IMG/VR virus record: IMGVR_UViG_3300031857_000010
Span: 1-64,000 of that record
Direction: 5' to 3' (one strand)
DNA length: 64,000 bases
Shown: piece by piece, positions 15,499 through 62,968 of the stretch
Layout of the letters: each line of letters starts with the position of its first letter
Numbering within the stretch: position 1 is the stretch's first letter
Program-made: the position numbers and the translations under genes
The notes under the pieces: model-generated
What the model was told of the DNA's origin: nothing
Seen by the model: only the letters and a program-made list of their open reading frames with translations
The model's database searches: none

Positions 15499-15506
15499 AA
15501 TAAATA
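15499..15506 (-). promoter_or_regulatory. Candidate late promoter TATTTATT
   Basis: 18 nt upstream of the ATG at 15480. Confidence 0.45.
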
Positions 15507-15519
15507 GTATTTTAAAAAA

Positions 15520-17982
15520 TTATAGAGATAACATTTCTTGATATACATTATTGATTTTCGGTTGAAAATAAGCTAAAACTTCTTGCCAATTGTTAAATGT
15601 GCTATTTCTTATCTCTTCTAAGTTATCATTTGATTGTTGAATATCTAAAATTTTACCATTTTTGATTAAATCTATTGACATTTCATAACCTCGGATAACA
15701 GACCATAAAGCTTTTTGGTACCTTTCAAATTCTCTATTTTCAAAAGATTTTTGGGCTAAATTCAAATGAAAATCTCCTCTTTCTTTTTGTTTTGTTTTTA
15801 TTTTTTGTTTATCTAAAACATAATTAAATTTAATTCTTTCTAGGGCTTTAAAATCATATGATTGCGTGTTATAAACTTGCCAAACCCTATCTGTAGGAAC
15901 GTAGTCTTCTACAAATGCACTTCCAGTTACATCGTTTAATTGTTTTTCAAATTCATCTGGGTTGTAAATATAATACTCAACATTGTCCTCTTTTATAATG
16001 GTGAGAGGTTCAGCATTTTGGGCAACAATTATAATATCTATATCTGAAGTATCATTTACAGTACCAAAATAATACGAACCATAAACATAAATGTTATATA
16101 TACCACTCATGGGAACACCAATTTTTTTTGCGATATTAAATAAATTTATAGAAGAGAGTTTTAAAATACTCTGTAATTTTGAATTTACTGAATCCTCTAA
16201 ATTGGGATCAAAAATGTCTCTACTTAAAATATTTGGGTTTGGTGTTAAATAATTTATATCAATATAATCTTGTCTGTATCTCTCTAAAAAACTGTCACTA
16301 AAATTCTCGAAAACAAATCCATTATACATTAATTTACACTTGTTTGTGTTTGTAACATCGATTTGTTCATAATAATTATATGTGCTTAAGTCATAAAATT
16401 CCTCTAAATAAATTATTAAATATTGACAAATTTGATTGGGATTGTTGAAAGGTCTTAAAGATAAAACTATTGGAGATCTAACTCCCCAATTCTTGTAAAT
16501 GTTTATATTTATGGTTTTAACAGTATCTCCTATATCAAATTGCAGTTCATATGTTGGATCTAAAACATCGTTGTTTGGATTGGCTAAGTTAAAAGCACTA
16601 ATTCCGTCATCAGGACCCAGAAGGCTTGGTGAGAAGTATTCGTAGTTTAATATAACTTTATCTCTTTTATTTGGGAAATTATGTTTTATTGAAATTGAAA
16701 GTTGATTAGTATTTAAGGGATCATAAATTTGACCAATATAGTCTAAATTATACCAATTTTGATCTTGAACAAATTCAAATTCACACCTAGTTAGATTCGG
16801 TACATTTGAATTGTTATTAGAGCCCATAGACATTGATCTAGATTGTCTAATACTCAAGCTTAAATTTGGGTTAGAGCTATCTATTAAAGTATTAATTTGA
16901 GCTGATAAATCAATTACACTTTGATAAATATAGTTTTGATTTATATCCTGCACACTATTGAAGTTGGGGCTATAACTCCTATAATTCCAATTAAAATATT
17001 GTTTAAAAACATTGAAACCTCTAAAGTTTTGTATTTGATTGTCATTTGATGGTTGAGGAATATTTATGACTTGTGCTGGAGAGCTAAAATAAATACCATC
17101 TTCTAAAACTATTTGTGCTGTATTGTTTTGACTTTGACTTATTGAATTATTGGATTGATTTTGCATTCTCAAAAAATTTACCGGAAGTAAACTTTCAAGA
17201 TATTTTATTGAATTGGTATTTGGACCGAAATTAGAATTTGAACTTTGTTGAAGTCTGATAATTTCATCTATGTTACCATAAAGTGGTTGACTATTAAAGT
17301 TATTTCTATACAAATATCTAGTTACATTAATATTTCCATCACATGTGTCTTTAAAATATTGTGAAAAGTCTTCAAATGATAATAAGGCACTTTTTTTATT
17401 AATTGTTATATTAAGATAGTAATTCTCACTATCTCCAGTAAAATTAATAAAATCAGATGGTCTTGTTGCGTTTGGATAGTTATTTGGTAAAAAATTACCA
17501 TTAGGTAAAACCCTATTGGTAAAATAATTTGTTAAAGAATTAGTTTTTAGATATTTTTCATCAGCATTGAATAAACTGTTTTTTGTATCTATGAGATTAA
17601 TATCAGTGTTTTCAATATCTGTACTTTGACCTTGATTTGAATAATTAATATATTTCCTATAATAATCATTAAAAAATTCTGCTAATTTTTTATTATCATA
17701 AAATAAATCCCTAAATTCCTCAATTGTAAGGAGGCTTTTTATATAATTAATAAACTCTAAAGCAATTTTTTCATTTTCAGGTTTATCTAAAAAAGCTTTG
17801 ACATTTAAATCATTTACTAATGATACACCTACCTGAGGTGTGTAAGAGAAATATTCTTGATTTAAATTAATATTTTGTTGAGTATCATACAATACAGGCT
17901 CGTTAGAATCTAAAGTCAAAAGACTATTTAGATTTGTATTAGCACTGAAGGCAATGTTGTATAATATCTCAAATTTTTGCAT
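15520..17982 (-). CDS. Asn-rich structural-type protein with a Calx-beta-like segment and a C-terminal Pol-beta-superfamily nucleotidyltransferase domain
   Basis: LQFDIGDTVKTININI (Calx-beta-like). NIYVYGSYYFGTVNDTSDIDIIIV is the hG[GS]x(9-13)DxD NTase signature, followed by a helical domain. Confidence 0.65.
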   Translation of the reverse strand: MQKFEILYNIAFSANTNLNSLLTLDSNEPVLYDTQQNINLNQEYFSYTPQVGVSLVNDLNVKAFLDKPENEKIALEFINYIKSLLTIEEFRDLFYDNKKLAEFFNDYYRKYINYSNQGQSTDIENTDINLIDTKNSLFNADEKYLKTNSLTNYFTNRVLPNGNFLPNNYPNATRPSDFINFTGDSENYYLNITINKKSALLSFEDFSQYFKDTCDGNINVTRYLYRNNFNSQPLYGNIDEIIRLQQSSNSNFGPNTNSIKYLESLLPVNFLRMQNQSNNSISQSQNNTAQIVLEDGIYFSSPAQVINIPQPSNDNQIQNFRGFNVFKQYFNWNYRSYSPNFNSVQDINQNYIYQSVIDLSAQINTLIDSSNPNLSLSIRQSRSMSMGSNNNSNVPNLTRCEFEFVQDQNWYNLDYIGQIYDPLNTNQLSISIKHNFPNKRDKVILNYEYFSPSLLGPDDGISAFNLANPNNDVLDPTYELQFDIGDTVKTININIYKNWGVRSPIVLSLRPFNNPNQICQYLIIYLEEFYDLSTYNYYEQIDVTNTNKCKLMYNGFVFENFSDSFLERYRQDYIDINYLTPNPNILSRDIFDPNLEDSVNSKLQSILKLSSINLFNIAKKIGVPMSGIYNIYVYGSYYFGTVNDTSDIDIIIVAQNAEPLTIIKEDNVEYYIYNPDEFEKQLNDVTGSAFVEDYVPTDRVWQVYNTQSYDFKALERIKFNYVLDKQKIKTKQKERGDFHLNLAQKSFENREFERYQKALWSVIRGYEMSIDLIKNGKILDIQQSNDNLEEIRNSTFNNWQEVLAYFQPKINNVYQEMLSL

Positions 17983-17985
17983 TCT

Positions 17986-18339
17986 TTATTTATTAATAGT
18001 TATAGAAAAAATTTCTGCCTTTTTAATTATATTCTGAGTGGTCGGTACAAGAGTATTGTTGCTATTTGTCTTACCACTAATGCCGGTAGATCTTATACTT
18101 TCAAAAAAGCCAAATTCTATAAAAGACGGATTAATTAATTGTCTTTCCATTGATACTCTTAAGGGATCTAATTCAACGTCAACATAATCATCGAATAATT
18201 TTAATTCTCTGTTTAGTTTTACATTAAGATAAAAATCTTTATGGTTTTGAGTTCCATAAGTTCCATCAGGCTGAACAATTCCCTCTGGTCTAGAATCTAT
18301 ATATAATTTTATTTTTAAATTTTTTTCCATTTTAGTCAC
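17986..18339 (-). CDS. Hypothetical protein
   Basis: 117 aa, tightly packed in the structural operon. Confidence 0.55.
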   Translation of the reverse strand: MTKMEKNLKIKLYIDSRPEGIVQPDGTYGTQNHKDFYLNVKLNRELKLFDDYVDVELDPLRVSMERQLINPSFIEFGFFESIRSTGISGKTNSNNTLVPTTQNIIKKAEIFSITINK

Positions 18340-21300
18340 TTGTTTGATTAGTGCTTTTTATCCAAGTAAATCCATTTTTATTACAATAGTCACCGTTGAT
18401 AGAAATATCATTTGAAAAATAAACATCTTCTATGGGACAATTATTTGAAGCTGTTGCTAAAAATCCATTAATTTTGATTGATCTATAAATAAGACTTGTT
18501 GATACTTTTTTAAGATTTCCTAAAAAACTATTACACCAAGCCCATCCCCAAACAGGATCTGAGCCTTGCCAAGCATTAGCCGAAAATCTTGTCCTTAAGA
18601 AAAAATCGGTTTCCTGATAGGTTAATTGACTAGAGGATCCTAAAGCAGATGAAATTAAAATGGATGGAGATTTTTTAAATGTTATTGATTTATTTATAAC
18701 TTTGTTTGATGGCGTTCCATTGTAGTTATATAATACAAAGTTTAAAAATGATATTATATAATTGCCTTGAGTTAATTTATTTACCGTCCTAATTCCTGAA
18801 TTAGTATTTATTTGATATACAAATTTATCATTTGTTGGAACGTCAAATGATAAATTTTTTAATGATCTTACAACATTATAAACCCCATTTACTCTAATAC
18901 TCAAAGGTCTTTCAGATATCCATATTTTTTCATTCGGTTTAACGTTAAAACCTAAAATATTTGATGATACAATTCCATTATTTATAATTTCTATTACAGC
19001 TTGGTTTTTTGTATTAACATTTGCCTGTGACCAATCATACAAAAATAGATTTTTCTGTGTGAATGAACCACCATATTGAGTTGTTGCCAATACAAAAGAA
19101 TCATCTTGAACAGATGGAGAAGTAAATCCATTTGGAAAGGTAGTCAAAGTACCATAACCTGCCTGTATTAGTAGTTGACCAAAATATAATTTTAAATTAA
19201 TTTGATAATCTGAAAAAGGCTCGAATAATAATATATCACTTATTGGAAAATTATTTTGTGTTGAATTTAATGGTGCTACTGGAATAAAATTATTCTGCAA
19301 AATATTGATACCTTTAGTTATAAATATTTGATTATATGTTGTATCAACATTTGATAAAGAACTAAATAAATATCCATTTGGAATAATCACTGCACTTGGA
19401 TAATATAATACATTTGTTGTTTTATCTAAACTGGTTCCCGTATAAGATTCAATAAATCCTTGAGCGTCATATTGAATTTGACTAAAACAATTTTTTATTC
19501 TTGTAAAAAAATAATAAGTTTCTTTTGAATTATCATTACCTGAATTTAATGTTATATTAGTATCTGTATTTATTTTTAAAGCGTTGTTAAATTCTTCTCC
19601 TAGTAAAACCGTTTTACTTAATAGGTTACTAGTTTTAAAATTATCTGAATTAGGATCTATGTTTGGTAGATAATTATAGCTGTTATTTTCAAACGTTATA
19701 GAATACTTACACTTAAAAAAACCCCAAATTGAATTTTGATTTAAACCTAAAAATGCTGGAATTGTACCTCCAAAAAATTCATCATTTGCTGGAAGTTTTA
19801 GTTTGAATTGTTTTCCATCGTATACAAACTGATCAGTAGAAACGCCAGTTGTAAAACCTGAAGTTACAACAACACTAATTGTTTCAGAAAATTTATATAG
19901 TTTATTATCAAATACAACGTTACTTCCTAAATTTGTAAAATTTATTTTAAAATAGGGTTCTAAAACTAAACTTCTTAATAATTTGCTATCGGTATTTCCG
20001 GTTACTAGTGTATTTTTCTCAATATAACCTTGATTAGATTGGTAGTAAGTTTGTAGTCTTGTTAAATTATCATTTAACCCTTGACTAACATATGTATTTT
20101 TAGCTACGGGTTTGTTGTATAGACTTCTTAATACAGCTATTCCATTAGGGGCATCATATGGAATTATCAATTCAACATATCTTTTATCGATGTCTTTATT
20201 TACATATAAAGTATAATTTATACTTTGTCCTTGATTAAAAGAACCTGCTATTAAATTGCTTGTAAGATTTCTAAATTTTAAAACTATTTTTCTTTGAATA
20301 TCGTCTTGTCTTGCTGAAATGAAATAAAAATTGACAGAATATAATAAATCAATTTGATTTAAATTTACAACAATACTATTGCTAAACCCTGTTCCCTGTG
20401 TATTTTGAAAGCCAAATGTTGACAAACAATCAGTTTCATTTTCATCAATATATATTTCTAAACTTTGATTTGGAACTAGTAGTTTTCTGTCAAGATTTAT
20501 ATCAATAGGAATTATTAGCGGGTTATTATCTTGTCTTGGTTCTGTAAATTCAAAAGATTGACTTGAAAAAGACACTTGAGATGGAACATCGTTATCGTTT
20601 ACATATAAGGAAATCATTTGAGCCTTTTCTGGGTCTGGTAAAAGACCTAAAATTGGAGTTACTTGCAAAGTAAGTCTTTTGACAGGTTCAACATAAAAAT
20701 CATCAGTAATTCTGATTCTTATATTTTTTGTAAGATTATCATTTTTATTCCATTCAATGTCATTAAAATTTAAAATAACATCTTGAGGCAATGTTACTGT
20801 TGTATATTCATTCATGTTTTCATCAACACCATATACAACATTTAATTTTGCTTTTTCATAACCTCTCGGTGGTTTTGAAATAGATATTTCAACATCAAAA
20901 AATTTATTTTCTAATAATCTGTCGTTAGAACCACCTTCTGTAACAGTAATTTGTTCTTGTTCAAAATATATAAAAGGGGGTCCAGTAGGTTCAACTTCTC
21001 TCCTAATCCAATGTCTGTCATAAAAAAATGGATAATTATTATTTATTTCAATAATATTTCCATTATCCAAAATTTCAGCTGTTTCAGAACCATATTCAAG
21101 TGGTAACCCATCTTCATTATAATAAAAAAATGGAAATTCTTGCTCTGCAGATAAATTTGAAATAAAATTATAGGTTGAAACAAAAATTGATTTGTTAGTA
21201 TTTGTTAGACTTTTAATGTCAAGTTCAAAAGGAAAAAAATAGTGTGCCTTTTTTTTTCCGTAAAGATTTTTACTCAAATCACCATTTCTAGAATCTAGAG

Positions 21301-21646
21301 GTTTGGAAAGTACAGACCAAGTTAATGCTGATGTATTTGAACTTTTATCATATATCCAAAATGGATAATTTGTCAGACCACTAGTGGCATTTGTACTAGA
21401 ATCGCCTATTCTGAAATCTAATTTTAGATTATCACAATCGCCCCATTTAGATTCTACCATACCGTACAAACAAAATTTATAAGAAGCATTTCTTTCCTGT
21501 TCAAATTTTACAGAAAAATCAAAAACATTATCTGCTTTTTCTACTTTTAAAATACTTTCCTCTCTGGATAATTCAGCATTTACAAAAAGTGAAATGTTTT
21601 TTGCATTTACATAATCTTTACTTGGTAATAATTCTTTTATTTTCAT
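18332..21646 (-). CDS. Large structural protein with Calx-beta-like domains
   Basis: 1104 aa. IYFEQEQITVTEG...IRITDDFYVEP...LYVNDNDVPSQVSFSSQSFEFTE. Confidence 0.55.
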   Translation of the reverse strand: MKIKELLPSKDYVNAKNISLFVNAELSREESILKVEKADNVFDFSVKFEQERNASYKFCLYGMVESKWGDCDNLKLDFRIGDSSTNATSGLTNYPFWIYDKSSNTSALTWSVLSKPLDSRNGDLSKNLYGKKKAHYFFPFELDIKSLTNTNKSIFVSTYNFISNLSAEQEFPFFYYNEDGLPLEYGSETAEILDNGNIIEINNNYPFFYDRHWIRREVEPTGPPFIYFEQEQITVTEGGSNDRLLENKFFDVEISISKPPRGYEKAKLNVVYGVDENMNEYTTVTLPQDVILNFNDIEWNKNDNLTKNIRIRITDDFYVEPVKRLTLQVTPILGLLPDPEKAQMISLYVNDNDVPSQVSFSSQSFEFTEPRQDNNPLIIPIDINLDRKLLVPNQSLEIYIDENETDCLSTFGFQNTQGTGFSNSIVVNLNQIDLLYSVNFYFISARQDDIQRKIVLKFRNLTSNLIAGSFNQGQSINYTLYVNKDIDKRYVELIIPYDAPNGIAVLRSLYNKPVAKNTYVSQGLNDNLTRLQTYYQSNQGYIEKNTLVTGNTDSKLLRSLVLEPYFKINFTNLGSNVVFDNKLYKFSETISVVVTSGFTTGVSTDQFVYDGKQFKLKLPANDEFFGGTIPAFLGLNQNSIWGFFKCKYSITFENNSYNYLPNIDPNSDNFKTSNLLSKTVLLGEEFNNALKINTDTNITLNSGNDNSKETYYFFTRIKNCFSQIQYDAQGFIESYTGTSLDKTTNVLYYPSAVIIPNGYLFSSLSNVDTTYNQIFITKGINILQNNFIPVAPLNSTQNNFPISDILLFEPFSDYQINLKLYFGQLLIQAGYGTLTTFPNGFTSPSVQDDSFVLATTQYGGSFTQKNLFLYDWSQANVNTKNQAVIEIINNGIVSSNILGFNVKPNEKIWISERPLSIRVNGVYNVVRSLKNLSFDVPTNDKFVYQINTNSGIRTVNKLTQGNYIISFLNFVLYNYNGTPSNKVINKSITFKKSPSILISSALGSSSQLTYQETDFFLRTRFSANAWQGSDPVWGWAWCNSFLGNLKKVSTSLIYRSIKINGFLATASNNCPIEDVYFSNDISINGDYCNKNGFTWIKSTNQTSD

Positions 21647-24600
21647 TAATAATTAAATGCTTGTATATAACTTTTTGATTGTGGGGACCCTCCTCCAAAT
21701 ACACCTTCAAGATAGTATCTCATGTTATTGTAACCTTTAGGATATTCATTTGGCTGCAAAGGTTTAGGTTGAAATACTGATAAAGAAGCTCCGTTATTTA
21801 TTTGATTCAGCCAATCTGAAAAAAACCATGACCCTTGGAATGGAACATTATTTCTGATATCAAATGATCTTGCGTCTTCTAGTTCTTCTCCTACATATGG
21901 TAAAAATCCTTTAGCGTCAAAATAACTTCTACTTACTTTATATGGATTTGTAATTTCTCCATACGCCAAACCATTTATAAAAACACCATAGTAATTTTCT
22001 CTTCTAAAAGTTGAATCATAAGGTTGGCCTCCATTTGTAGCATAGTCGGATGATGCGTTGCATTTACTAGGGCCTAATCCAACTTCTCTAGGAACTAAAC
22101 TAGTCAAATAATAATTTTTTTCTTCACCCTCTGCACCTACAGCATATCTATAAACTGGTTGAACTATACCTGCAATTGATTTTATTCCTCTTGGAGTATA
22201 CGTTTGTCCTAAATAAAACAAGTATGATGCACCTTCATAAGAATTTGTATTAGGATTATATTTATCATTAGCTGGTAAAACAATTTCAAAATACGAATAT
22301 GTTTGAAAATCCATTCCTTTGTCCCAACCTCCGGGAACCACTTCTTGGCCATTGATATTAACTTTTGTTGTTCCTATATTAACAATTCTTAACTGACCTT
22401 GTCTATAATTTTCTATTCTAGTGAATTTGATTTCACATCTTTTTCTAAAAGAATAGGATGGACTTGTAGTTAGTTCTCCTTTTTGTAACCAGACAAAACC
22501 TTCAGATTTTGGACCGGGACAAGTTTTACAAGTATCTGAACTTTTTTTAGACTGATCAACAATTAATTCTTGTAAATTAAATCTTGCGAACTTAGCTGTG
22601 AAAGGAGGTTTTTTTGGATTTAAATAATACGGTTTTTCAATTCTATAGATATTTAATCTTCCAAATTTGGAAAAGAAATTTGCTCGACTTCCCATTTGAA
22701 GTGTAACTTCATCAATGTAATTGTAAATTGAAAAGTAATATGAGTTATATTCATTTGGACTTTGATAAACTGAATTTTTATCATGATTTGCAAAAATATT
22801 ATAGTCATTCTCTAATAAATGATCTCCCCAAGATTCATTTTTAATTCTTGGCCACCCTCTAGGTTTTAGCCAATATGCATATCCAGCTTCTAATCTTTGA
22901 TATCTTTCTCCAGCAATATCTGGTTTACCAGCCCAATCATAAGCTTCTGGATATTTATCTAAATCATAAGGTGTGAGTCCAGCATTATACCCATTAGACC
23001 ACTCTTCAGTCCAGTGATCAACTGCTTCATATCTCCAAATTTCATTTTTTGTTACTTCTCTTGAAAAATTATTTCCTGCATAAACTTGATTGAATGATTG
23101 TAAACCATAACCATTAGCATTTGTAGCCCAAGCATCTGGACCTCCTGCCATATCACCGTCTATAAATCTTGGTTGTAGAAAAAACTGTCCTTCAGATAAG
23201 TTGTATGTATTGGTTATTCCATTTCTATTTGTTATAGTAGGATTTAAATTTGGTGATCCATCAGGATTCCATGATTTTAATGGGTTTGTAATTATTGGTT
23301 TTCTTGCAACTCTGTATGTATCAGGATAATTTAATGACCATGGTTTTTCATAAGGATATTTTCCAATTCCGGAACCGGGAGGAGGAGAATCAGACTCATT
23401 TTCCCAACCACTAAATCTATTTAAATCAAAATGATTTACCTTAAAATATTTTACATTACCGTTTAAATCTGTTGGCCAATTTTCTGCAAAACCAGTAGTT
23501 TGAGATGAAACATTAGGGTCGGGAAAAGAAGTTTTTATTTGATATGCTCCTAGCCATAAACCTTTGTTTCCATTGGTGTCAATACCGTTTGGATCATAAA
23601 GGTTGGCAGGTAATTTAAATGCATTAAAATTAGTAGTATTAAATTCAACTTTATTATTTTTAATCTTGAATTCATCATTCCACGAAGTTTTTAAATCCAA
23701 GTTTCTATCATAAATGTCAATTATTTTTACTAATTCTACTTTTGGTAAAACATCTACGACAAAAGGTTTAGTCATGTCTCTTATAAAAACAGTAAAAGGA
23801 TTATTGACTCCAATTGCAGCCAATTCTTCAAGAACTTTTGGAGTAGATTCGACTGACTGATTAGTTATATTTTGTGGATTACCAGCTTGTGCTGAAATGG
23901 GATAAGTAAAAAAAGTTATCCATTTTCTTAAATCCAACACAATTGAAAGTTCTATTTCTGTATATCCTGTTTGAAATTCACCCCAAGACGGGACTATGTT
24001 TACTGGAAATTGATTAAAATATAAATGAGGTATTGTTGAAATATTTGGCTCATCATTTAAAGGGTATGGAAAAAAATTTAATGCAACTTCTTCTGGTTCT
24101 AACCCTTGTTTTAATAAATCTACTTCCAACATTAAAGTTTGTTGTCCAGTTGGAATGTTGTGAAGAACAAATTCTCCAAATTCGTTGGTTAAAGATGTAT
24201 ATTTATATTTTGGTGGTATGGTATCATTTCCTAAATCTTTTGGAGAATATGTGACATCAGTAAGATATGATTGAAAACTTCCATAGCTTGTTAAATTATT
24301 AGGCCCATTTACAGATGTTAAATTCTCAAATAAATTCAATTCAATTCTATTCCCATTTTCATCTACAGATCCTATTGAAGGTATTTCTTCACTCGGATTA
24401 AAAATTCCGACGACTGCATTTTTTATTGGAACTCTTAACTTATTTCCAACATCATCTAATAAAACTTGAATAGCTTCTATTTTTCCAAAAAGCACACCTC
24501 TATCATTAGTAAATTTTGGAGATTCATTTATTGGTACATTGTATACATTTAATGTATTTAAAACTTCTACCCCTCTATTAATTTTTATATTTAAAAAATA

Positions 24601-24999
24601 ATCATTAAACAAAACCTCTTCAAAAAAAACATATGAAAATAAATTGCTTAAAGGGATTTGATTTTGATTTGCTTGATATTTAATTCTATCTATGTAATCT
24701 TCCGAAATATAAGCTCTTTCGTTGGAATCTATTTTTTTAGATACTTCGTTTTGTATTACACTTCCAGTATAAATATTATAACCAGCACTTATAGCTGAAA
24801 GTGGAATGTTGTAATTATCATAATCTAATCCAAATTCTGTTTCTAAAATTGATTGACTTAGTTTTAAAGGATTGTTATTTACATCAGTTATAAGATAATA
24901 AATAGAATTGTCATCAGAGGTTTGACCACTGAATGTAGTGAAGTAATTAATTAATGTTTTTACTGCTTCTCCTTGTATAAGAATTTCTTCTTGTTGCAT
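21646..24999 (-). CDS. Large structural protein with a carboxypeptidase-regulatory/prealbumin-like beta domain
   Basis: 1117 aa. GVLFGKI...IKNAVVGIF...TNEFGEFVLHNIPTGQQTLMLEVDL. Confidence 0.5.
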   Translation of the reverse strand: MQQEEILIQGEAVKTLINYFTTFSGQTSDDNSIYYLITDVNNNPLKLSQSILETEFGLDYDNYNIPLSAISAGYNIYTGSVIQNEVSKKIDSNERAYISEDYIDRIKYQANQNQIPLSNLFSYVFFEEVLFNDYFLNIKINRGVEVLNTLNVYNVPINESPKFTNDRGVLFGKIEAIQVLLDDVGNKLRVPIKNAVVGIFNPSEEIPSIGSVDENGNRIELNLFENLTSVNGPNNLTSYGSFQSYLTDVTYSPKDLGNDTIPPKYKYTSLTNEFGEFVLHNIPTGQQTLMLEVDLLKQGLEPEEVALNFFPYPLNDEPNISTIPHLYFNQFPVNIVPSWGEFQTGYTEIELSIVLDLRKWITFFTYPISAQAGNPQNITNQSVESTPKVLEELAAIGVNNPFTVFIRDMTKPFVVDVLPKVELVKIIDIYDRNLDLKTSWNDEFKIKNNKVEFNTTNFNAFKLPANLYDPNGIDTNGNKGLWLGAYQIKTSFPDPNVSSQTTGFAENWPTDLNGNVKYFKVNHFDLNRFSGWENESDSPPPGSGIGKYPYEKPWSLNYPDTYRVARKPIITNPLKSWNPDGSPNLNPTITNRNGITNTYNLSEGQFFLQPRFIDGDMAGGPDAWATNANGYGLQSFNQVYAGNNFSREVTKNEIWRYEAVDHWTEEWSNGYNAGLTPYDLDKYPEAYDWAGKPDIAGERYQRLEAGYAYWLKPRGWPRIKNESWGDHLLENDYNIFANHDKNSVYQSPNEYNSYYFSIYNYIDEVTLQMGSRANFFSKFGRLNIYRIEKPYYLNPKKPPFTAKFARFNLQELIVDQSKKSSDTCKTCPGPKSEGFVWLQKGELTTSPSYSFRKRCEIKFTRIENYRQGQLRIVNIGTTKVNINGQEVVPGGWDKGMDFQTYSYFEIVLPANDKYNPNTNSYEGASYLFYLGQTYTPRGIKSIAGIVQPVYRYAVGAEGEEKNYYLTSLVPREVGLGPSKCNASSDYATNGGQPYDSTFRRENYYGVFINGLAYGEITNPYKVSRSYFDAKGFLPYVGEELEDARSFDIRNNVPFQGSWFFSDWLNQINNGASLSVFQPKPLQPNEYPKGYNNMRYYLEGVFGGGSPQSKSYIQAFNY

Positions 25000-25048: not shown

Positions 25049-26485
25049 TTAATAATCTTGTGGATATAACTTATCGACTATTTTGAAATTCAATTTTTCA
25101 GCAATTATTCTTCTAGTTCCTAGTTCGTTAATTCTGAATGTAATTTGATAGTTTTGATTTGACAATAGCCAAGAAGTGTCTAAGTCTAAGAAAGATTTAG
25201 CACACCCATCAATAATTGCAGAATTACATGGTGTCCAAGGAATTATCTCTATGACATTATTCATAGAAAGTCTGTATTCGAGTCCAAAATTTGTTTTTGG
25301 ACTTTTTAAAGTATAATTCACTCTCGTATCAGCATAAATTCTAATGAGTTCATCTGTTTGTAGGGTGTCATTATTATTTAACCCATATGTTGTGACCACA
25401 TAATCATTTATACTTTTAGAATTATTTGTGTAATAATTCTGATTTATATCAAAAAATTGAATAAAATCTGTTTGATCATATCCGGGTTGAAATGTTACCC
25501 CTTGCCAAACATCTTTATATCTTTGACCGGGTGTTGCACCACTCATCCAAACATCAACATAATATACGCCTTTAGAAAGTTGTTGAGGTACCAAACCTGT
25601 AAACACATTAGCATTACTCATCGTTTTTATACTCACTGTACTAGATGAATAGAAATTTGTTGCCTGATTTCCTGAAAACGTATAAAGAAATAATCTGCAA
25701 GGTCTATTATTTGTTACTATATTTCTGTCATCATTTATTGTTTGATTGTATGTAACCTCCAAATAAGGTTTAAATGATGAATTTGTTTTTTGAGTAAAAA
25801 ATGAAGCAATATTTCGTGTATCTCCACTTTCTAATTCATAGGGTCTGGAATAACTGACTGCTAATCCATAATTTATAGAACCACCAGACAACCAATCATT
25901 AACAATATTTGTAACATCCATACTTATATCTTCGCTACCCAGCTGAAAATGCTGAGTGGAATAATAAGTTGTGGATGCTGTTGGATTGTTATATATTCCG
26001 GGTTCATTCCAAGAATCATTAGATTTTGCATAAATCCAATTTGAATTACCGGTAAGTCTCAGATTGCCTGCAGACTTTATCAAATAATTTGTATCAAATA
26101 AATCATAACCTCTTCCTTCATCCCAATCTTTGTCTATTGGGAAAGAAATTAGATCAAAAGAAGCGGAAATAGCTTTATTTAAAGTCGCATTTTGATATTC
26201 TGGTATGAGAATTTTATCTGAAGGGACTGAATTTTTTAATACAATTCTAAAGGATTGTACGGTTCCAGAATTTATAATTAAATCACTAAATTTTGTTACT
26301 AAATTAGAAAGGTCAAAATACAACAATAATCTGCTTATATTATTTTCTCTATATACTCCATTTTCGGTGAATCCTCCACCATAAAATATATCAGAAACAG
26401 GATTTTGTGAAGAATTTATGTATTCAAAGGCAGAACCGCTTGCAATTGTATTGCTTTTGCTTGGATAAATGCGATAAACAGACAT
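25049..26485 (-). CDS. Structural protein with a DNRLRE-like domain
   Basis: SRLLLYFDLSNL, W..G.G, W..PG, DVTNIVNDWLSG...NYGLAV, KPYLEVTY pattern. Confidence 0.5.
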   Translation of the reverse strand: MSVYRIYPSKSNTIASGSAFEYINSSQNPVSDIFYGGGFTENGVYRENNISRLLLYFDLSNLVTKFSDLIINSGTVQSFRIVLKNSVPSDKILIPEYQNATLNKAISASFDLISFPIDKDWDEGRGYDLFDTNYLIKSAGNLRLTGNSNWIYAKSNDSWNEPGIYNNPTASTTYYSTQHFQLGSEDISMDVTNIVNDWLSGGSINYGLAVSYSRPYELESGDTRNIASFFTQKTNSSFKPYLEVTYNQTINDDRNIVTNNRPCRLFLYTFSGNQATNFYSSSTVSIKTMSNANVFTGLVPQQLSKGVYYVDVWMSGATPGQRYKDVWQGVTFQPGYDQTDFIQFFDINQNYYTNNSKSINDYVVTTYGLNNNDTLQTDELIRIYADTRVNYTLKSPKTNFGLEYRLSMNNVIEIIPWTPCNSAIIDGCAKSFLDLDTSWLLSNQNYQITFRINELGTRRIIAEKLNFKIVDKLYPQDY

Positions 26486-26501: not shown

Positions 26502-26509
26502 TATAAATA
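26502..26509 (-). promoter_or_regulatory. Candidate late promoter TATTTATA
   Basis: 16 nt upstream of the ATG at 26485. Confidence 0.55.
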
Positions 26510-26555
26510 GAACAATAAAAAAATCAATAATTTTTTAATGATATATTTATTATCA

Positions 26556-26945
26556 ATGGCTAATACAATAAATATCCGATTTCCGTTCAGAGAAACTTAT
26601 GATGGTGGTGTTTTTGATAGTACAATTACATCTGAAGCAGCTTATCAATCAGATTTAATATCTCTTTTGACAACAAAAAGAGGTCAAAGAGTTATGAGAT
26701 CTAAATTATATTCTCCAATATATGATTATTTAATGGAGCCTTTAGATACCATTACTGAACAAGAACTAAGGAGAGATATAGATTCAAAGGTTAGAGAGTA
26801 CATACCACAAATTGAGATAAAAAAAATTAGATTTAATCCAGATTATGATAATAATGCTCTCGGAATTAAAATTATTTACATTATAAAAGAATATTTTAGT
26901 ATTGAGAAAACTTTAGATTTATCTTTCCCAACTGAAATACAATAA
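26556..26945 (+). CDS. Baseplate wedge subunit, T4 gp25/GPW-like
   Basis: DLISLLTTKRGQRVMRSKLYSPIYDYLMEP...REYIPQIEI. Start placed at the second Met (MANTINIRFPF); the ORF track start is 26538. Confidence 0.85.
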   Translation: MANTINIRFPFRETYDGGVFDSTITSEAAYQSDLISLLTTKRGQRVMRSKLYSPIYDYLMEPLDTITEQELRRDIDSKVREYIPQIEIKKIRFNPDYDNNALGIKIIYIIKEYFSIEKTLDLSFPTEIQ

Positions 26946-32462: not shown

Positions 32463-32495
32463 GGTTTTTATTAATAAATATATTGAAGGAAAAAA

Positions 32496-33380
32496 TTATT
32501 TATTTTTATTTAAGAAATTAGTCTTAAATATTTTATAGAAACCTTTAAATCTACTCAAAGAATAAGTAATTTCTTTAGTTTCAAGACCTGTACGCTCTTT
32601 CAAGAGATAATAAATTGTGTTTTTATTATATAGTTTTAAAAGTTCATGATTTCTAAAAACCCACACTATGGCTTCTCCTACCCTACGATCGTTTGGAAGC
32701 ATTTTAGGTTTTTGAATTTCCTCTTCTAGTTTATTTATAATATTTTCAAAAATTTTTAAATTTACATCCTCTTTTTCGATTTCATCATAATCTAGAATAT
32801 TTTCAGGTCTACCTGAAGCCTCTTCAATGGACTCATCAATATCAACATTAGATTTTACATGTTTATATTGAATTCTCTTTTCTCCCATTAAATAGTGTTT
32901 AGCTATTGTTCCTAAATATGAAAAAGCTTGAGTACCATTTTTGGGATTGAATTTGTCTATTTTGGTTATTAAAAAAGACATACAATCTATTTGTAGTTCT
33001 TTTACTTCAACATCAGATCGAAATAGTTTATATGTAAAAATTATATTTTCAATTAATTTAGTCATAGGTTTATATAGATGTTTACTATAGATCCTATTTT
33101 TTTCTTCAATATCTTGAGAATTAATATAATCAACTATTGCTTTTTCTTGTTCAGGATACCAATATCTTTTAGAACCTTCATATTTCTTATCTAATTCATT
33201 CATTGCAATCAGATCCTTATAATATTCTCTTAATACAGAGATGTCTGGTGATCCATCATCAGATTTTAAAATATCAGAAAATGCACTTTTAAATAGAATT
33301 CCATGAAGATAGACATATTCTTCTCCAACAGTATCAAATTTTAAATCATCAAGTTTTAATAATTTTTTATTTTTTTCCAT
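32496..33380 (-). CDS. Phage sigma70-family factor (gp55-like, probably late)
   Basis: Region-2-like DCMSFLITKIDKFNPKNGTQAFSYLGTIAKHYL. No obvious canonical region-4 motif. Confidence 0.65.
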   Translation of the reverse strand: MEKNKKLLKLDDLKFDTVGEEYVYLHGILFKSAFSDILKSDDGSPDISVLREYYKDLIAMNELDKKYEGSKRYWYPEQEKAIVDYINSQDIEEKNRIYSKHLYKPMTKLIENIIFTYKLFRSDVEVKELQIDCMSFLITKIDKFNPKNGTQAFSYLGTIAKHYLMGEKRIQYKHVKSNVDIDESIEEASGRPENILDYDEIEKEDVNLKIFENIINKLEEEIQKPKMLPNDRRVGEAIVWVFRNHELLKLYNKNTIYYLLKERTGLETKEITYSLSRFKGFYKIFKTNFLNKNK

Positions 33381-33394: not shown

Positions 33395-33427
33395 AAAAGG
33401 GGGTTTTTTAGGCCCCCCTTTTTTTTT
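33395..33427 (-). terminator. Possible intrinsic terminator
   Basis: AAAAGGGGG-N10-CCCCCTTTT inverted repeat flanked by A/T tracts, just after the GT gene. Confidence 0.45.
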
Positions 33428-35520: not shown

Positions 35521-35568
35521 ATTTAAAATTTTTTATTTAAAAATATTTTTTTTGTTGGATAAAGTAAA

Positions 35569-36240: not shown

Positions 36241-36276
36241 ATTTTTAAAAATAATTTTATTAAAAATAAAGTAAAC

Positions 36277-36306
36277 AAAAAAGTCTCCCAAGTTAGAGAG
36301 ACTTTT
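36277..36306 (-). terminator. Intrinsic terminator
   Basis: Minus strand AAAAGTCTCTC-TAACTT-GGGAGACTTTTTT, just downstream of ORF 36326..36754. Confidence 0.65.
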
Positions 36307-36325
36307 AAAAACATTAATTATTTTT

Positions 36326-36754: not shown

Positions 36755-36760
36755 AGTAAA

Positions 36761-56142: not shown

Positions 56143-56969
56143 GCTTTTAATTGTTTTTTATTTTGAATTATTTCTAAAGTATCATAATAAAGATCGGAAT
56201 TAATTTTTTCCGAATTTAAAGGATTGTCAATATTATAAAAATACATTACATCGCTTATGTGAAATGTTTTTTCAAATCCTGCCAAATCAGCCAAAGGATA
56301 AAATAATGCATAGTTAGAACAGGTTGAAAACCATTCACCTTTATCATCAGTAAAATATTCGAATTTCGGGTCTAATTGACAAAATTTATCATAAAGTGAT
56401 TTTCTAAAAGTAATTGGATGGGAAAATTTAGGTGTTATTCTTCTTAATATAGGAAATTCTTTTTCTTGATAAGTGGTAGAATAGCATTTTTTACCATCTG
56501 TCAATTTAGAAGATCCATAAGTCATCAAACAATCTTTTTCATTATAGATTTCATTTATTTTTTTTAGAACGTTTTTATTTGATAACCAGTCGTCACCATA
56601 TAAAATAAAAATAATATCATCAGGATCCGTCGAAGCATTTATAATAGCATTGTGAATATTCGGTAGAGCAGTAAGTCTTCTACTTGATTTCCAAGCATTT
56701 ACCTTTAAACATTTGGTTATTTCTAGTATGGGATGAATTTCGGTGATTATTAATTCTCCTTTTTCATCCCTGACAGGTTCATTTTTATCATCTGTCTGGT
56801 AAATACAAGCAGGTATTTTATTATAGCTATCGTCATTTGAAAAATCGTCTATAAATAAAACTTCATAATTATCATAATCTTGAGTCAGTACTGAATTAAC
56901 ACACATGTCAAAATAATCTCCGGGATTATGCAAGGGAATGATGACCTTAATTTTGTTATTTTTTATCAT
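56139..56969 (-). CDS. GT2 glycosyltransferase
   Basis: VIIPLHNP, SVLTQDY, FIDDFSND, LYGDDWL. Confidence 0.8.
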   Translation of the reverse strand: MIKNNKIKVIIPLHNPGDYFDMCVNSVLTQDYDNYEVLFIDDFSNDDSYNKIPACIYQTDDKNEPVRDEKGELIITEIHPILEITKCLKVNAWKSSRRLTALPNIHNAIINASTDPDDIIFILYGDDWLSNKNVLKKINEIYNEKDCLMTYGSSKLTDGKKCYSTTYQEKEFPILRRITPKFSHPITFRKSLYDKFCQLDPKFEYFTDDKGEWFSTCSNYALFYPLADLAGFEKTFHISDVMYFYNIDNPLNSEKINSDLYYDTLEIIQNKKQLKA

Positions 56970-57027: not shown

Positions 57028-57035
57028 TATTTATA
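57028..57035 (+). promoter_or_regulatory. Candidate late promoter TATTTATA
   Basis: 14 nt upstream of the ATG at 57050. Confidence 0.55.
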
Positions 57036-58166: not shown

Positions 58167-58183
58167 AATAATTTTTTATAAAT

Positions 58184-58211
58184 AAAAAAACCCGAAAAAA
58201 ATTCGGGTTTT
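58184..58211 (-). terminator. Intrinsic terminator for the converging minus-strand genes
   Basis: AAAACCCGAA-N5-TTCGGGTTTT followed by a T-tract on the minus strand. Confidence 0.8.
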
Positions 58212-58458: not shown

Positions 58459-58466
58459 TATAAATA
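58459..58466 (-). promoter_or_regulatory. Candidate late promoter TATTTATA
   Basis: 13 nt upstream of the ATG at 58445. Confidence 0.5.
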
Positions 58467-58474: not shown

Positions 58475-59182
58475 TTATTTATATTTATCTAAAATTTTTG
58501 AGATAACTTTATTTCTAACTATGTCGTTCTCAGAAAATCTAAACACCCCTATTTCTTCTAAATCAGATAATCTCGTCAGAGCATCATATAATCCAGTTTC
58601 TTTTGTGTCTTTGTATCTATCAGACTGTTCAAGATCTCCACTTATTATAAACTTTGAATTATATCCTATTCTTGTTAGTAAAGTTTTTACTTGTCTTGGT
58701 GTTGCGTTTTGAAATTCTTCAGCAATTACTATGGCATTGTCTATATTTATACCTCTCATAAAAGCAAGCGGTATAACTTTTATATATTCTCTTTCGATTA
58801 AACTTTGTACTCTATTTTTTCCTAATGCTTTTTCAAATAGATAAATTGAAGAATAAATATACGGTTCCATTTTTTCCTCTAATGAACCTTTTAAATATCC
58901 AAGTTTTTCATCAGCTTCAACTGCTGGTGTACATAGAATAATCTGATAAAAATCTGTATTTGGATTTTTTAAAAGCTCTAATGCTTTGAGAATAGATATC
59001 ATCGATTTTCCGACACCCGCTGGTCCAGAACAAATAATTATTTCCTTATTATCTATGAGTTCTAAAAATTCTTTTTGACTATTATTTTTTGGTTGGAAAT
59101 ATAAATCTCCTATTAAAATTTCTAAATCTTTTTTGGTTTCATTTTGGTAACCACTGATTCTAGTCTTTTTCTTAGATGCCAT
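58475..59182 (-). CDS. phoH: PhoH-family ATPase
   Basis: SGPAGVGKS, EKLGYLKG, PLAFMRG, EEFQN (EE where DE is usual), LLTRIG, GDLEQSD. Confidence 0.92.
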   Translation of the reverse strand: MASKKKTRISGYQNETKKDLEILIGDLYFQPKNNSQKEFLELIDNKEIIICSGPAGVGKSMISILKALELLKNPNTDFYQIILCTPAVEADEKLGYLKGSLEEKMEPYIYSSIYLFEKALGKNRVQSLIEREYIKVIPLAFMRGINIDNAIVIAEEFQNATPRQVKTLLTRIGYNSKFIISGDLEQSDRYKDTKETGLYDALTRLSDLEEIGVFRFSENDIVRNKVISKILDKYK

Positions 59183-59197: not shown

Positions 59198-59205
59198 TAT
59201 AAATA
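59198..59205 (-). promoter_or_regulatory. Candidate late promoter TATTTATA
   Basis: 15 nt upstream of the phoH ATG. Confidence 0.5.
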
Positions 59206-59276: not shown

Positions 59277-59284
59277 TATTTATT
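59277..59284 (+). promoter_or_regulatory. Candidate late promoter TATTTATT
   Basis: 16 nt upstream of the ATG at 59301. Confidence 0.5.
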
Positions 59285-59300
59285 ATAATAAATTAGGATC

Positions 59301-60693: not shown

Positions 60694-61011
60694 ATGATTT
60701 ACTGGAAAATTACAAATTTATCAAATCAAAACGCTAAATTAATTGTTAGCACAGCACCAAACCATTCAAAAGGTTTAATTATAAAACCCGGAGAGTTTTG
60801 CCTATCTAATCCGAAACAAACCCCGGTGATGGATGCCCAAATAAGAAGAGGACTTATTAGTGTTGAAAAAGAATTTGATAATTCAAAATATGGATTTAAA
60901 ATAGCAGAGGCTTATAATTTAGACATTCTAAATAATTTAATTCAGCAGGAAGAAGATAAAATGAAACAAGCTAAAATTGATGCTGAAAACTATATAAACA
61001 ATCCTGAATAA
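60694..61011 (+). CDS. Hypothetical protein
   Basis: 105 aa, A-rich leader. Confidence 0.6.
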   Translation: MIYWKITNLSNQNAKLIVSTAPNHSKGLIIKPGEFCLSNPKQTPVMDAQIRRGLISVEKEFDNSKYGFKIAEAYNLDILNNLIQQEEDKMKQAKIDAENYINNPE

Positions 61012-61015
61012 TTTT

Positions 61016-61633: not shown

Positions 61634-61684
61634 TATTTTATTTGTTTTTTTTATTTAGTATTTTTTGAGAAATAATTAAAAAAT

Positions 61685-62947
61685 ATGTCAGATAATCAAA
61701 TTAAAATTTTAATGGTGCCAAGTGATTTGGCGGGTGTTGGTCATTACAGAAATATTTGGCCCGGTCAAGAAATTAATAAAAAATTCGGTAATCAATTCAA
61801 AATTGAGATTGATCATACACCAGATTTTAATAATGTTGATTTTTTCGCTCAATTTGATATTGTTCATTTTCATAGACAGTTAGGTCCATTTGAAAATCAA
61901 GAAAAATTAATTAAGGAACTTAGAAGCAGAGGTGTTGTAGTTGTGATGGATTTAGATGATTACTGGATGCCATCAAAAGATCATCCTATGTACGGTGCAG
62001 CCCTCAAAGAGAAATTGGCAGAGAAAGTTACTGCTACATTTAAAATGGTAGATTATGTGACCACAACTACTGATATTTTTGCAAGTCATATTAAGAGATA
62101 TAATCCAAATGTAAAAGTCGTTCCAAATGCTATTGATATGGCACATCCTATGTGGGCTCAAGAGAATACAAAAAAAACAGACAGAGTTAGAATATCTTGG
62201 ATTGGTGGTTCCAGTCATGCAAAAGATTTAGAGTTGCTTAAGAACTCTATGAATATATTGCACAATGACTCGAATTTGAGAAACAAATATCAAATTGTAA
62301 TGTGTGGTTATGATATTCGTGGCTATATAACAGAAGTCGACCAAGATGGTAATGTAATTAATAACAGAAAAATAACTCCTCAAGAAACAATATGGAACGT
62401 ATTTGAAGGAGTTTTTACAGATAATTATAATCCTAATTTTATATCAGAAGATTATAAAAAATATTTATTGAAGTGTGAAAACGCTCAATTTAAAGGATTT
62501 GATGTTTATGAAGGACCATATGTTAGAAGGTGGACTCTTCCACTTACTCAGTATGGAAAACACTATAATTATTGTGATGTTTGTTTGGCTCCCTTAGCTG
62601 AAAATACATTTAATGAAGTTAAGTCTGAATTGAAAATCATAGAAGCTGGTTTGACTAAGAAAGTTCTTATAGCACAAGAATATGGTATTTATAAAGAATT
62701 GATAAAGAATGGTGAAAATGGAATTTTAATTCCTAAATCTAAAAACGTAAGAGGTTGGTATGAGGCAATTAGAAAGGTCGTAAACGATAAAGAATACAGA
62801 GAGAAATTAGCGAACAATCTTTATGAATTTGTGAAAGACAAATATACTTTGGAGATAGTAACCGCAAATAGGGTTCAGTGGTATAAAGAAATTGTTGAAA
62901 AAGCTCAAAAAAATAAACCAATTCTTCAAGAGTCTTACTCAAACTAA
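61685..62947 (+). CDS. GT4/GT-B glycosyltransferase
   Basis: GVGHYR, VVMDLDD, PNAID, WIGGSSH, DVCLAPL, KSELKIIEAG, NGENGIL. Confidence 0.85.
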   Translation: MSDNQIKILMVPSDLAGVGHYRNIWPGQEINKKFGNQFKIEIDHTPDFNNVDFFAQFDIVHFHRQLGPFENQEKLIKELRSRGVVVVMDLDDYWMPSKDHPMYGAALKEKLAEKVTATFKMVDYVTTTTDIFASHIKRYNPNVKVVPNAIDMAHPMWAQENTKKTDRVRISWIGGSSHAKDLELLKNSMNILHNDSNLRNKYQIVMCGYDIRGYITEVDQDGNVINNRKITPQETIWNVFEGVFTDNYNPNFISEDYKKYLLKCENAQFKGFDVYEGPYVRRWTLPLTQYGKHYNYCDVCLAPLAENTFNEVKSELKIIEAGLTKKVLIAQEYGIYKELIKNGENGILIPKSKNVRGWYEAIRKVVNDKEYREKLANNLYEFVKDKYTLEIVTANRVQWYKEIVEKAQKNKPILQESYSN

Positions 62948-62960
62948 TTAAATTTCTTAA

Positions 62961-62968
62961 TATTTATA
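62961..62968 (+). promoter_or_regulatory. Candidate late promoter TATTTATA
   Basis: 15 nt upstream of the ATG at 62984. Confidence 0.55.

What the first reader, a model, noticed from the sequence alone, without database searches (positions are those of the whole stretch)
15499..62968. Recurring TATTTATW promoter-like motif, the reverse complement of the T4 late promoter, with a candidate cognate sigma factor in the same window
Seen on the coding strand 13-18 nt before ATGs at 15480, 26485, 57050, 58445, 59182, 59301 and 62984 (10 nt for 32462; 4 nt for 26556). I did not see it at this spacing before the glycan-island genes. T4 gp55 reads TATAAATA, and here the orientation is inverted. Inference: ORF 32496..33380 recognises TATTTATW as a -10-only late promoter, giving very short leaders. 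Caveats: the genome is AT-rich and there are unlinked copies (e.g. 58177-58184).
Basis: partly seen in the sequence, partly recalled or inferred. Interest (0 to 1): 0.6.

Follow-up and report, generated by a model that had tools for sequence, protein, structure and literature searches.

The report
Phage late promoter with its sigma factor
A large lake-water phage carries a strict seven-letter signal (TATTTAT) just upstream of its particle-building genes, plus an unannotated sigma factor that probably reads it; the same pair recurs in hundreds of related phages, so it looks like an undescribed late-gene switch comparable to the one in phage T4.

Summary
In the window, 8 of 24 upstream regions carry TATTTATW 10-19 nt before the ATG, against 0.5 in shuffles (0 of 2000). 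In the whole 216.7-kb phage genome the count is 16 against 1.9 (0 of 1000). The antisense form is not enriched.

The motif is (A/C)TATTTAT(A/T) with no -35 element, and single-mismatch variants are not enriched. It precedes portal, terminase, gp25-like baseplate, PhoH and fibre-like genes.

It is the top upstream 7-mer in 78 IMG/VR loci that encode relatives of ORF 32496-33380 (214 against 40 expected). It is also enriched in Flavobacterium phage immuto and Microcystis phage Mel-JY01, and it stays at orthologous sites in relatives with 49-51% GC.

The heptamer-to-ATG distance has two peaks: a sharp one at 4-5 nt, suggesting leaderless mRNAs, and a broad one at 10-20 nt.

ORF 32496-33380 folds as a sigma factor with sigma-2 and sigma-4 domains. 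Its best structural match is T4 gp55 (Z 10.5). It is the only sigma-like gene detected in immuto, Mel-JY01 and a 98%-complete relative, all of which keep the motif.

Verdict: a late promoter and late sigma pair, a new variant of the T4 gp55 theme. No start-site or biochemical data exist.

The parts
32496..33380 (-). Gene for a divergent sigma factor (294 aa): a roughly 70-aa N-terminal extension, a sigma-2 domain (about residues 72-171) and a sigma-4-like domain (about residues 202-294). Proposed reader of the TATTTAT promoters.
   Evidence: Pfam Sigma70_r2 in 21 of 29 homologues, best E 3e-6; the ORF itself scores E 0.007. VIA-align hits: 7d7d_F (T4 gp55) Z 10.5, rmsd 2.6, 95 residues; sigB, SigC and sigE region 2 at Z 8.8-10.1; region 4 hits at Z 5.2-7.3. 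ESM Atlas neighbour cluster is named sigma factor.
15499..15506 (-). Late-promoter box TATTTATT, 18 nt before ATG 15480 of gene 14599-15480. Predicted start near 15494-15495.
26502..26509 (-). Late-promoter box TATTTATA, 16 nt before ATG 26485 of gene 25049-26485 (fibre-like, weak CBM96 hit). Homologues in 11 related loci (about 9 distinct sequences) carry the box at the same place.
26544..26551 (+). Late-promoter box TATTTATT, 4 nt before ATG 26556. Predicted leaderless mRNA for the gp25-like baseplate gene.
   Evidence: Homologues start at the aligned ATG, and all 23 syntenic loci carry TATTTAT (TATTTAG in two) ahead of this gene.
26556..26945 (+). gp25-like baseplate wedge gene with a revised start (the ORF list gives 26538). 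It is followed by the gp6-like wedge gene 26951-28807.
   Evidence: Pfam GPW_gp25; PHROG baseplate wedge for the neighbouring gene; start supported by homologues.
32473..32480 (-). Late-promoter box TATTTATT, 10 nt before ATG 32462 of the 114-aa gene directly downstream of the sigma gene.
   Evidence: The orthologous site is conserved in 19 of 19 syntenic loci, including those at 49-51% GC, and in immuto.
57028..57035 (+). Late-promoter box TATTTATA, 14 nt before ATG 57050.
58459..58466 (-). Late-promoter box TATTTATA, 13 nt before ATG 58445.
59198..59205 (-). Late-promoter box TATTTATA, 15 nt before ATG 59182 of the PhoH-like gene 58475-59182. One half of a divergent promoter pair.
   Evidence: The immuto PhoH gene carries the same box.
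59277..59284 (+). Late-promoter box TATTTATT, 16 nt before ATG 59301. The other half of the divergent pair.
62961..62968 (+). Late-promoter box TATTTATA, 15 nt before ATG 62984.
33395..33418 (-). GC-rich hairpin followed by a T run (terminator-like), lying between the upstream gene 33426-34364 and the sigma gene. There is no TATTTAT box ahead of the sigma gene itself.
   Evidence: sequence read

Best explanation
(A/C)TATTTAT(A/T) is the late-gene promoter of this phage lineage. It is a strict, -10-type element that works without a -35 box. It is read by host core RNA polymerase carrying the phage sigma factor encoded at 32496-33380.

Transcription is inferred to start 5-6 nt downstream of the heptamer. 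The resulting mRNAs either have 6-15 nt, A-rich leaders without a Shine-Dalgarno sequence (the eight window sites at 10-18 nt) or are leaderless (TATTTAT-N4/5-ATG: the gp25-like gene at 26556, plus portal and terminase outside the window).

The sigma gene itself has no such box and lies upstream of the baseplate module. It is presumably made earlier and then switches on the structural genes.

Shown here: the motif's position, strand bias and stringency; its conservation; the sigma fold; the co-occurrence of sigma and motif; and the late or structural nature of the genes downstream.

Inferred: that this sigma, and not another factor, reads the box; where transcription starts; and the timing.
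For: Statistics:
- Window: 8 against 0.52. Genome: 16 against 1.9. The antisense form is not enriched.
- Stringency: exact heptamer 136 sense against 21 antisense. No single-mismatch variant is enriched.
- No -35 signal in three genomes.

Start-site inference:
- A-rich positions lie 5-7 nt after the heptamer.
- They coincide with a sharp peak of ATGs 4-5 nt after it: 35 sense against 3 antisense in 435 de-duplicated upstream regions.

Conservation:
- TATTTAT is the top 7-mer in 78 loci that encode the sigma: 214 against 39.6 expected. Sense exceeds antisense in 71 loci, and the reverse holds in none.
- The box is kept at the orthologous sigma-to-p114 site in 19 of 19 syntenic loci, and ahead of the gp25 homologue in 23 of 23. 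This includes genomes at 49-51% GC, where the flanking sequence is unrelated.

Link to the sigma:
- Immuto (32 against 5.1) and Mel-JY01 (24 against 5.3) keep the motif, and no other sigma-like gene is detected in either.
- G003, 98% complete, likewise has no other sigma-like gene detected.
- phi38:1 lacks the sigma and has 0 copies in 45 upstream regions.
- In Mel-JY01 the box lies 20-45 nt upstream, ahead of GGAG leaders. It therefore behaves as a promoter, not a translation signal.

Gene class:
- Immuto: terminase, portal, tail spike, structural protein, PhoH.
- This genome: portal, terminase, a protein with a pre-neck-appendage-like region, and gp25.
- The motif is rare in the small-gene region at 168-217 kb: 2 of 46 regions against 19 of 84 elsewhere, p = 0.006.

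Sigma fold.
Against: - There is no transcription start-site, expression-timing or binding evidence. No listed RNA run holds the sequence.
- This genome encodes three further sigma factors: two RpoD-like and one ECF-type. The assignment relies on relatives that lack them.
- The ORF itself scores below the Pfam cut-off (E 0.007), and the profile search of PDB sequences found nothing.
- The sigma has a sigma-4-like domain but no matching -35 element is seen.
- Many upstream regions in the window, including the head of the glycan island, have no box, so other promoter classes or read-through must exist.
- The record is only 83% complete.
Confidence: 0.7

Rival explanations
1. The box is a real late promoter, but in this genome it is read by one of the other phage sigma factors (the RpoD-like pair at 67805-68668 and 68774-69631, or the ECF sigma at 199979-200656). 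Alternatively, it is read by host sigma with a phage activator. In either case ORF 32496-33380 does something else.
For: Four sigma-like genes are present. The RpoD-like pair lies behind a middle-type promoter, as a late sigma would. No direct link between ORF 32496 and the box has been shown.
Against: Immuto, Mel-JY01 and the 98%-complete G003 keep the box and have only the ORF 32496-type sigma. The ECF sigma already has a textbook ECF-type promoter class in this genome, TGTAAC-N16/17-CGT. In the leaderless cases the box sits where a -10 element sits, which is an unlikely place for an activator site.
Confidence: 0.15
2. The heptamer acts at the RNA level, as a translation-initiation enhancer, an operator for a translational repressor or a processing site, and is not a promoter.
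For: It lies close to start codons in phages whose hosts do not use Shine-Dalgarno sequences. The leaders are A/U-rich.
Against: Spacing to the ATG is not fixed: 4-5, 10-20 and, in Mel-JY01, 20-45 nt ahead of a separate GGAG. At orthologous genes the spacing drifts between 4 and 20 nt. The box typically follows terminators and occurs at both sides of divergent regions. It is almost absent ahead of tightly packed internal genes: 1 of about 160. It co-occurs with a sigma factor.
Confidence: 0.08
3. The box is a variant of the host's own promoter element (Bacteroidota -7 box TAnnTTTG) and is read by the host primary sigma.
For: TATTTATW shares T1, A2, T5 and T7 with TAnnTTTG. The nearest cultured relative infects Flavobacterium. 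Immuto early promoters look like TTGC-N19-TATATTTAGG.
Against: There is no -33 element. Positions 6 and 8 differ from the host consensus, and mismatch variants that would approach it, such as TATTTTT, are not enriched. The same box occurs in a phage recorded on Microcystis. It is absent from Flavobacteriia phage phi38:1. In immuto it is segregated from the host-like early promoters.
Confidence: 0.05

Closest known systems
Phage T4 late transcription: sigma gp55 reading the -10-only box TATAAATA
   Same: Both are phage-encoded sigma factors that redirect host core polymerase to late structural genes. Both use a strict AT-only box of about 8 bp with no -35 element. Both occur in myoviruses with T4-type portal, terminase, gp25 and gp6 genes. 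The best structural match of the sigma-2 domain is gp55.
   Different: The coding-strand box is TATTTATW, not TATAAATA; the T4 control confirms the opposite orientation. There is no sequence similarity to gp55. The protein is 294 aa with an extra N-terminal region and a sigma-4-like domain, which gp55 lacks. No gp45-type clamp or gp33-like co-activator was found. Leaders are far shorter or absent, against 20-29 nt in T4.
Two-domain (group 4 / ECF-like) sigma factors
   Same: The architecture is sigma-2 plus sigma-4 without region 3. Structural matches include SigC, sigE, SigK, SigW and CnrH region 2.
   Different: ECF promoters are bipartite (GAAC-like -35, CGT-like -10). That type exists in this genome as a separate class (TGTAAC-N16/17-CGT) alongside a canonical ECF sigma. 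The TATTTAT class has no -35 element.
Phage sigma cascades such as Bacillus phage SPO1 (gp28, gp33/34) and phiEco32 gp36
   Same: Successive phage sigma factors with distinct promoter classes drive temporal gene classes. This genome shows three promoter classes and four sigma genes.
   Different: The sequences, hosts and promoter consensus all differ, and no homology was shown. The late class here lacks a -35 element and often gives leaderless mRNAs.

Membership tests
Sigma-70 family of RNA polymerase sigma factors (ORF 32496-33380) | Sigma region 2 domain (core binding and -10 recognition) | tested here: met
   Pfam Sigma70_r2 in 21 of 29 homologues, best E 3.3e-6. The ORF itself scores E 0.007, below the cut-off. 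Structure matches to region-2 domains at Z 8.5-10.5, rmsd 2.5-2.8, 85-95 residues.
Sigma-70 family of RNA polymerase sigma factors (ORF 32496-33380) | Sigma region 4 helix-turn-helix domain | tested here: inconclusive
   Residues 202-294 match sigma-H region 4 (3mzy, Z 7.3), SigA region 4 (6ono, Z 5.3) and sigE region 4 bound to DNA (2h27, Z 5.2). These Z values fall in the range the tool warns is common for helical models, and there is no Pfam region-4 hit.
Sigma-70 family of RNA polymerase sigma factors (ORF 32496-33380) | Binds core RNA polymerase and confers promoter-specific initiation | not testable with these tools
   Requires biochemistry. The host is unknown.
T4 gp55-type late sigma | Sequence homology to gp55 | tested here: not met
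   hhalign of the family profile against T4 gp55: probability 0.1%, E 0.51. No PHROG hit. No BLAST hit between T4 and this genome.
T4 gp55-type late sigma | Minimal sigma lacking region 4, working with gp33 and the gp45 clamp | tested here: not met
   A C-terminal sigma-4-like domain is present. There is no gp45 Pfam hit in the 83%-complete genome. The conserved 114-aa neighbour folds as a plain helical hairpin with no gp33 match.
T4-type late promoter | Strict AT-only -10 box without a -35 element, upstream of late genes | tested here: met
   Invariant heptamer, with mismatch variants not enriched. No -35 signal. Structural genes lie downstream.
T4-type late promoter | Consensus TATAAATA on the coding strand | tested here: not met
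   The coding-strand consensus is (A/C)TATTTAT(A/T), and WATAAATA is not enriched. The T4 control gives TATAAATA in the sense orientation.
Bacteroidota primary-sigma promoter (-33 TTTG / -7 TAnnTTTG) | Bipartite -33 and -7 elements | tested here: not met
   There is no conserved upstream element, and two conserved -7 positions differ. The consensus itself is taken from established knowledge, not from a tool.

The most novel reading that the evidence does not exclude
A large, so far unannotated family of phage sigma factors is found in at least 490 IMG/VR contigs, in cultured Flavobacterium and Microcystis phages, and in jumbo and mega-sized contigs. On this reading it is the late sigma of a whole branch of T4-like-capsid myoviruses. 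It reads a near-invariant heptamer, TATTTAT, without a -35 element, and frequently starts transcription exactly at the start codon. Leaderless late mRNAs would then be a regular feature of these phages. In the jumbo members it would be the last step of a cascade of three promoter classes and four sigma factors.
Probability: 0.55. Interest if true: 0.7.

Novelty: new variant of a known kind. Interest (0 to 1): 0.6.

Why it matters
Late-gene switching by a phage sigma is a textbook mechanism known mainly from T4 and a few Bacillus and enterobacterial phages. Here the same logic appears with a different box and a protein unrelated in sequence, across hundreds of environmental phages of Bacteroidota and possibly cyanobacteria. 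Their sigma genes are annotated as hypothetical.

Practical gains:
- The box gives an immediate rule for calling late operons and correcting gene starts in these genomes. An example is 26556 in place of 26538.
- It predicts leaderless late mRNAs.
- It can be tested in a cultured system: phage immuto on Flavobacterium sp. LMO8.
- It offers a comparison case for how a sigma-2 domain reads a near-mirror sequence of the gp55 box, and for what a sigma-4 domain does at a promoter without a -35 element.

Tried and rejected
- Pfam and PHROG scans of the ORF alone gave no hit. Only the family scan and the fold revealed the sigma.
- A profile search of PDB sequences found nothing.
- Foldseek on the whole model gave only E > 0.1, although nearly all the hits were sigma factors.
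- hhalign against T4 gp55 gave no signal.
- RNA evidence: the only listed RNA runs, three small lake metatranscriptomes, hold none of the sampled words.
- The 114-aa neighbour as a gp33 analogue: it folds as a helical hairpin with only generic matches. Rejected for lack of support.
- A gp45-type clamp: no Pfam hit.
- An alternative start at 56836 for the first glycan gene, which would have given it a box: rejected, because the GT2 domain begins at residue 9 of the long form.
- A fourth motif, TTTACTTT, ahead of 34327, 35569 and 36761: only six sites and no strand bias. Left open.
- Literature: no paper in the library holds all three terms 'TATTTATA', 'late promoter' and 'phage', and none of the listed hits for the broader searches describes this box or this sigma. 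The Ma-LMM01 transcriptome paper (PMC5780444) reports different motifs and no phage sigma. A jumbo-phage review (PMC7824862) notes minimal and RpoD-like sigma factors in T4-like jumbo phages but gives no promoter.


Full report
**What the window is.** The window is the first 64 kb of a 216,699-bp IMG/VR virus record with 28.6% GC, estimated 83% complete. Public runs place it in lake water. Its nearest annotated relatives are Flavobacterium phage vB_FspM_immuto (Immutovirus, 160 kb) and Microcystis phage Mel-JY01. It carries morphogenesis genes distantly like those of T4. The gp6-like and gp25-like baseplate wedge genes lie in the window. Portal and large terminase lie just outside it.

- The total count of TATTTATW in the window is barely above chance: 68 against 53 +/- 7.
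- The placement is far from chance. Of 24 upstream intergenic regions of at least 26 nt in the window, 8 carry the box on the coding strand 10-19 nt before the ATG. Dinucleotide shuffles give 0.52 +/- 0.72, and none of 2000 reaches 8. The reverse complement gives 2 against 0.55.
- Across the whole genome the figures are 16 of 132 against 1.92 +/- 1.39, with 0 of 1000 shuffles reaching 16.
- The base before the heptamer is A or C in 21 of 22 sites, although C is only 8% of intergenic DNA. Nothing upstream resembles a -35 element.
- The first glycan-island gene has no box. The nearby copy at 56850-56857 lies inside its glycosyltransferase domain.
- The copy at 58177-58184 is an orphan between two terminator hairpins.

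**The motif is conserved and strict.**
- In Flavobacterium phage immuto, TATTTAT occurs 32 times in oriented upstream regions against 5.1 expected. With a preceding A or C it is 23 sense against 2 antisense within 10-29 nt.
- There it precedes terminase, portal, a tail spike, a structural protein, PhoH and the gene directly after the sigma homologue. PhoH and the post-sigma gene carry the box in the window too.
- Immuto's array of small early genes uses a different, host-like bipartite promoter.
- In Mel-JY01 the heptamer is again enriched (24 against 5.3) and strand-specific. There it lies 20-45 nt upstream, typically after a terminator and ahead of a GGAG-containing leader.
- In 78 IMG/VR loci that encode relatives of ORF 32496-33380 (30-55% identity), TATTTAT is the single most enriched upstream 7-mer: 214 against 39.6 expected. 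Sense exceeds antisense in 71 loci, and the reverse never occurs.
- No single-mismatch variant shows a sense bias. The exact heptamer is 136 sense against 21 antisense.
- At orthologous sites the box is kept while the flanks diverge. This holds upstream of the gene after the sigma in 19 of 19 syntenic loci, and upstream of the gp25 homologue in 23 of 23. It includes genomes of 49-51% GC, where the AT-only word stands alone.
- Controls behave as expected. The same script on T4 recovers TATAAATA in the sense orientation 20-29 nt before start codons, and not TATTTAT. Cellulophaga phage phi38:1, which has no homologue of the sigma, has no copy in 45 upstream regions.

**Where transcription probably starts.** Two independent signals point to the same place.
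- In sites with a leader, positions 5-7 nt after the heptamer are strongly A-rich.
- In 435 de-duplicated upstream regions of the related loci, the heptamer-to-ATG distance has two peaks. One is a sharp spike at 4-5 nt (35 sense, 3 antisense). The other is a broad hump at 10-20 nt.
- A fixed spacing of that size is what leaderless mRNAs starting on the A of the ATG would give.
- In this genome the spike class includes portal, terminase and the gp25-like gene. For the last of these, homologues begin at the ATG aligned with 26556, so the ORF-list start at 26538 is probably wrong.
- For the eight window sites at 10-18 nt, the predicted leaders are about 6-15 nt, A-rich and without a Shine-Dalgarno sequence.
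- These start sites are inferred, not measured. No listed RNA run holds the sequence.

**The candidate sigma factor.**
- ORF 32496-33380 has no Pfam or PHROG hit on its own.
- It belongs to a large family: 256 clusters in the protein search and at least 490 viral contigs.
- In that family, 21 of 29 sampled members hit Pfam Sigma70_r2.
- An AlphaFold model (mean pLDDT 74) was compared with 48,161 PDB representatives without a Foldseek pre-filter. The top hit is T4 gp55 in the gp45-dependent activation complex (7d7d_F, Z 10.5, rmsd 2.6, residues 72-171). A run of sigma region-2 domains follows. Residues 202-294 match sigma region 4 more weakly (Z 5.2-7.3).
- Sequence profiles show no relation to gp55. 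The protein is a sigma factor, but it is not shown to be a gp55 orthologue.

**Linking the sigma to the box.** This genome has three more sigma genes: two RpoD-like (67805-68668 and 68774-69631) and one ECF-type (199979-200656).
- The comparative pattern separates them. Immuto, Mel-JY01 and a 98%-complete 165-kb relative have no other detectable sigma gene but keep both the ORF 32496-type sigma and the box.
- The ECF sigma already has an obvious partner in this genome: a bipartite TGTAAC-N16/17-CGT promoter class ahead of replication-type genes and the RpoD-like pair.
- The box is also scarce in the small-gene region at 168-217 kb: 2 of 46 regions against 19 of 84 elsewhere, p = 0.006.
- The sigma gene has no box of its own. 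It sits behind a terminator-like hairpin and directly upstream of a box-driven baseplate module. That fits a regulator made before the genes it controls.

**Comparison with what is known.**
- The logic is that of T4 late transcription: a phage sigma, a strict AT-only -10 box, no -35 element, and structural genes downstream.
- The differences are real. The coding-strand word is the reverse complement of the T4 box. The protein is unrelated in sequence and has an N-terminal extension and a sigma-4-like domain. No gp45-type clamp or gp33-like partner was found. Leaders are far shorter or absent.
- A jumbo-phage review notes that T4-like jumbo phages, including some of Bacteroidota, encode minimal and RpoD-like sigma factors (PMC7824862). 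No paper found by the searches run here describes this box or assigns it a sigma.

**Verdict.** The sigma-box link remains an inference from co-occurrence. It is best filed as a new variant of a known kind. I put about 0.7 on the full mechanism, and higher on the narrower claim that the box is a conserved late promoter element.

Noticed in passing
G000:C1 69662-207900 (outside the window); example at 69662-69687(-): A second promoter class, ECF-type and bipartite: TGTAACTT-N14/15-(T/A)CGTT(T/A)AA. There are 13 copies lying 10-30 nt before genes. Those genes include the RpoD-like sigma pair (68774-69631, 67805-68668) and a DnaB/ATPase-like gene (122866-123777). It probably belongs to the phage ECF sigma at 199979-200656(+).
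   Followed up: partly
G000:C1 198885-216680 (outside the window): A third motif, CCTTTTTT-N10/11-CGTATTGA, with 8 copies ahead of small genes at the right end of the contig. One copy heads the operon containing the ECF sigma. It may be the early class. With four sigma genes this suggests a multi-step cascade.
   Followed up: partly
G000:C1 71119-74262(-) and 74322-77063(-): The portal gene (1047 aa) has an HNH-endonuclease insert at about residues 440-540. The large terminase is unusually long at 913 aa. These may be homing-endonuclease or intein-type insertions. Both genes have TATTTAT 4-5 nt before the ATG.
   Followed up: partly
window 58177-58184(-): An orphan TATTTATA lies between the terminator hairpins of two convergent genes, with no ORF downstream. 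It could be a chance copy or the start of a short RNA.
   Followed up: partly
window 26538-26556(+): The gp25-like baseplate gene most likely starts at 26556, not at the first ATG 26538. Homologues begin MAN/MAR at the aligned codon.
   Followed up: yes
window 34327-38431(-) upstream regions; also G000 70538 and 90657: A weak TTTACTTT word lies 30-45 nt before several genes that lack the TATTTAT box, including glycosyltransferase genes. There are only six sites and no clear strand bias.
   Followed up: partly
L015-L023 (immuto, MW353176.1) about 60-76 kb: The early small-gene array of phage immuto uses a repeated promoter, TTGC-N19-TATATTTAGGTATCAATAATTAAAAC. It resembles the Bacteroidota primary-sigma consensus and is clearly separate from the TATTTAT class.
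   Followed up: partly
L036 (IMGVR_UViG_3300032116_021241): A second IMG/VR contig of 103,946 bp, under a different IMG/VR identifier, encodes an identical sigma protein. Essentially the same phage seems to have been recovered twice.
   Followed up: no
L085, L100, L104: Relatives with 49-51% GC keep the synteny around the sigma gene. They use TATTTAT, TATTTAG or TATTTAC at the orthologous promoter sites. This is a natural series for studying which positions the sigma tolerates.
   Followed up: partly
window 18332-24999(-): Two ORFs of about 1100 aa (18332-21646 and 21646-24999) have no Pfam or PHROG hit at all. They lie beside fibre-like and baseplate genes and are probably tail fibres.
   Followed up: no
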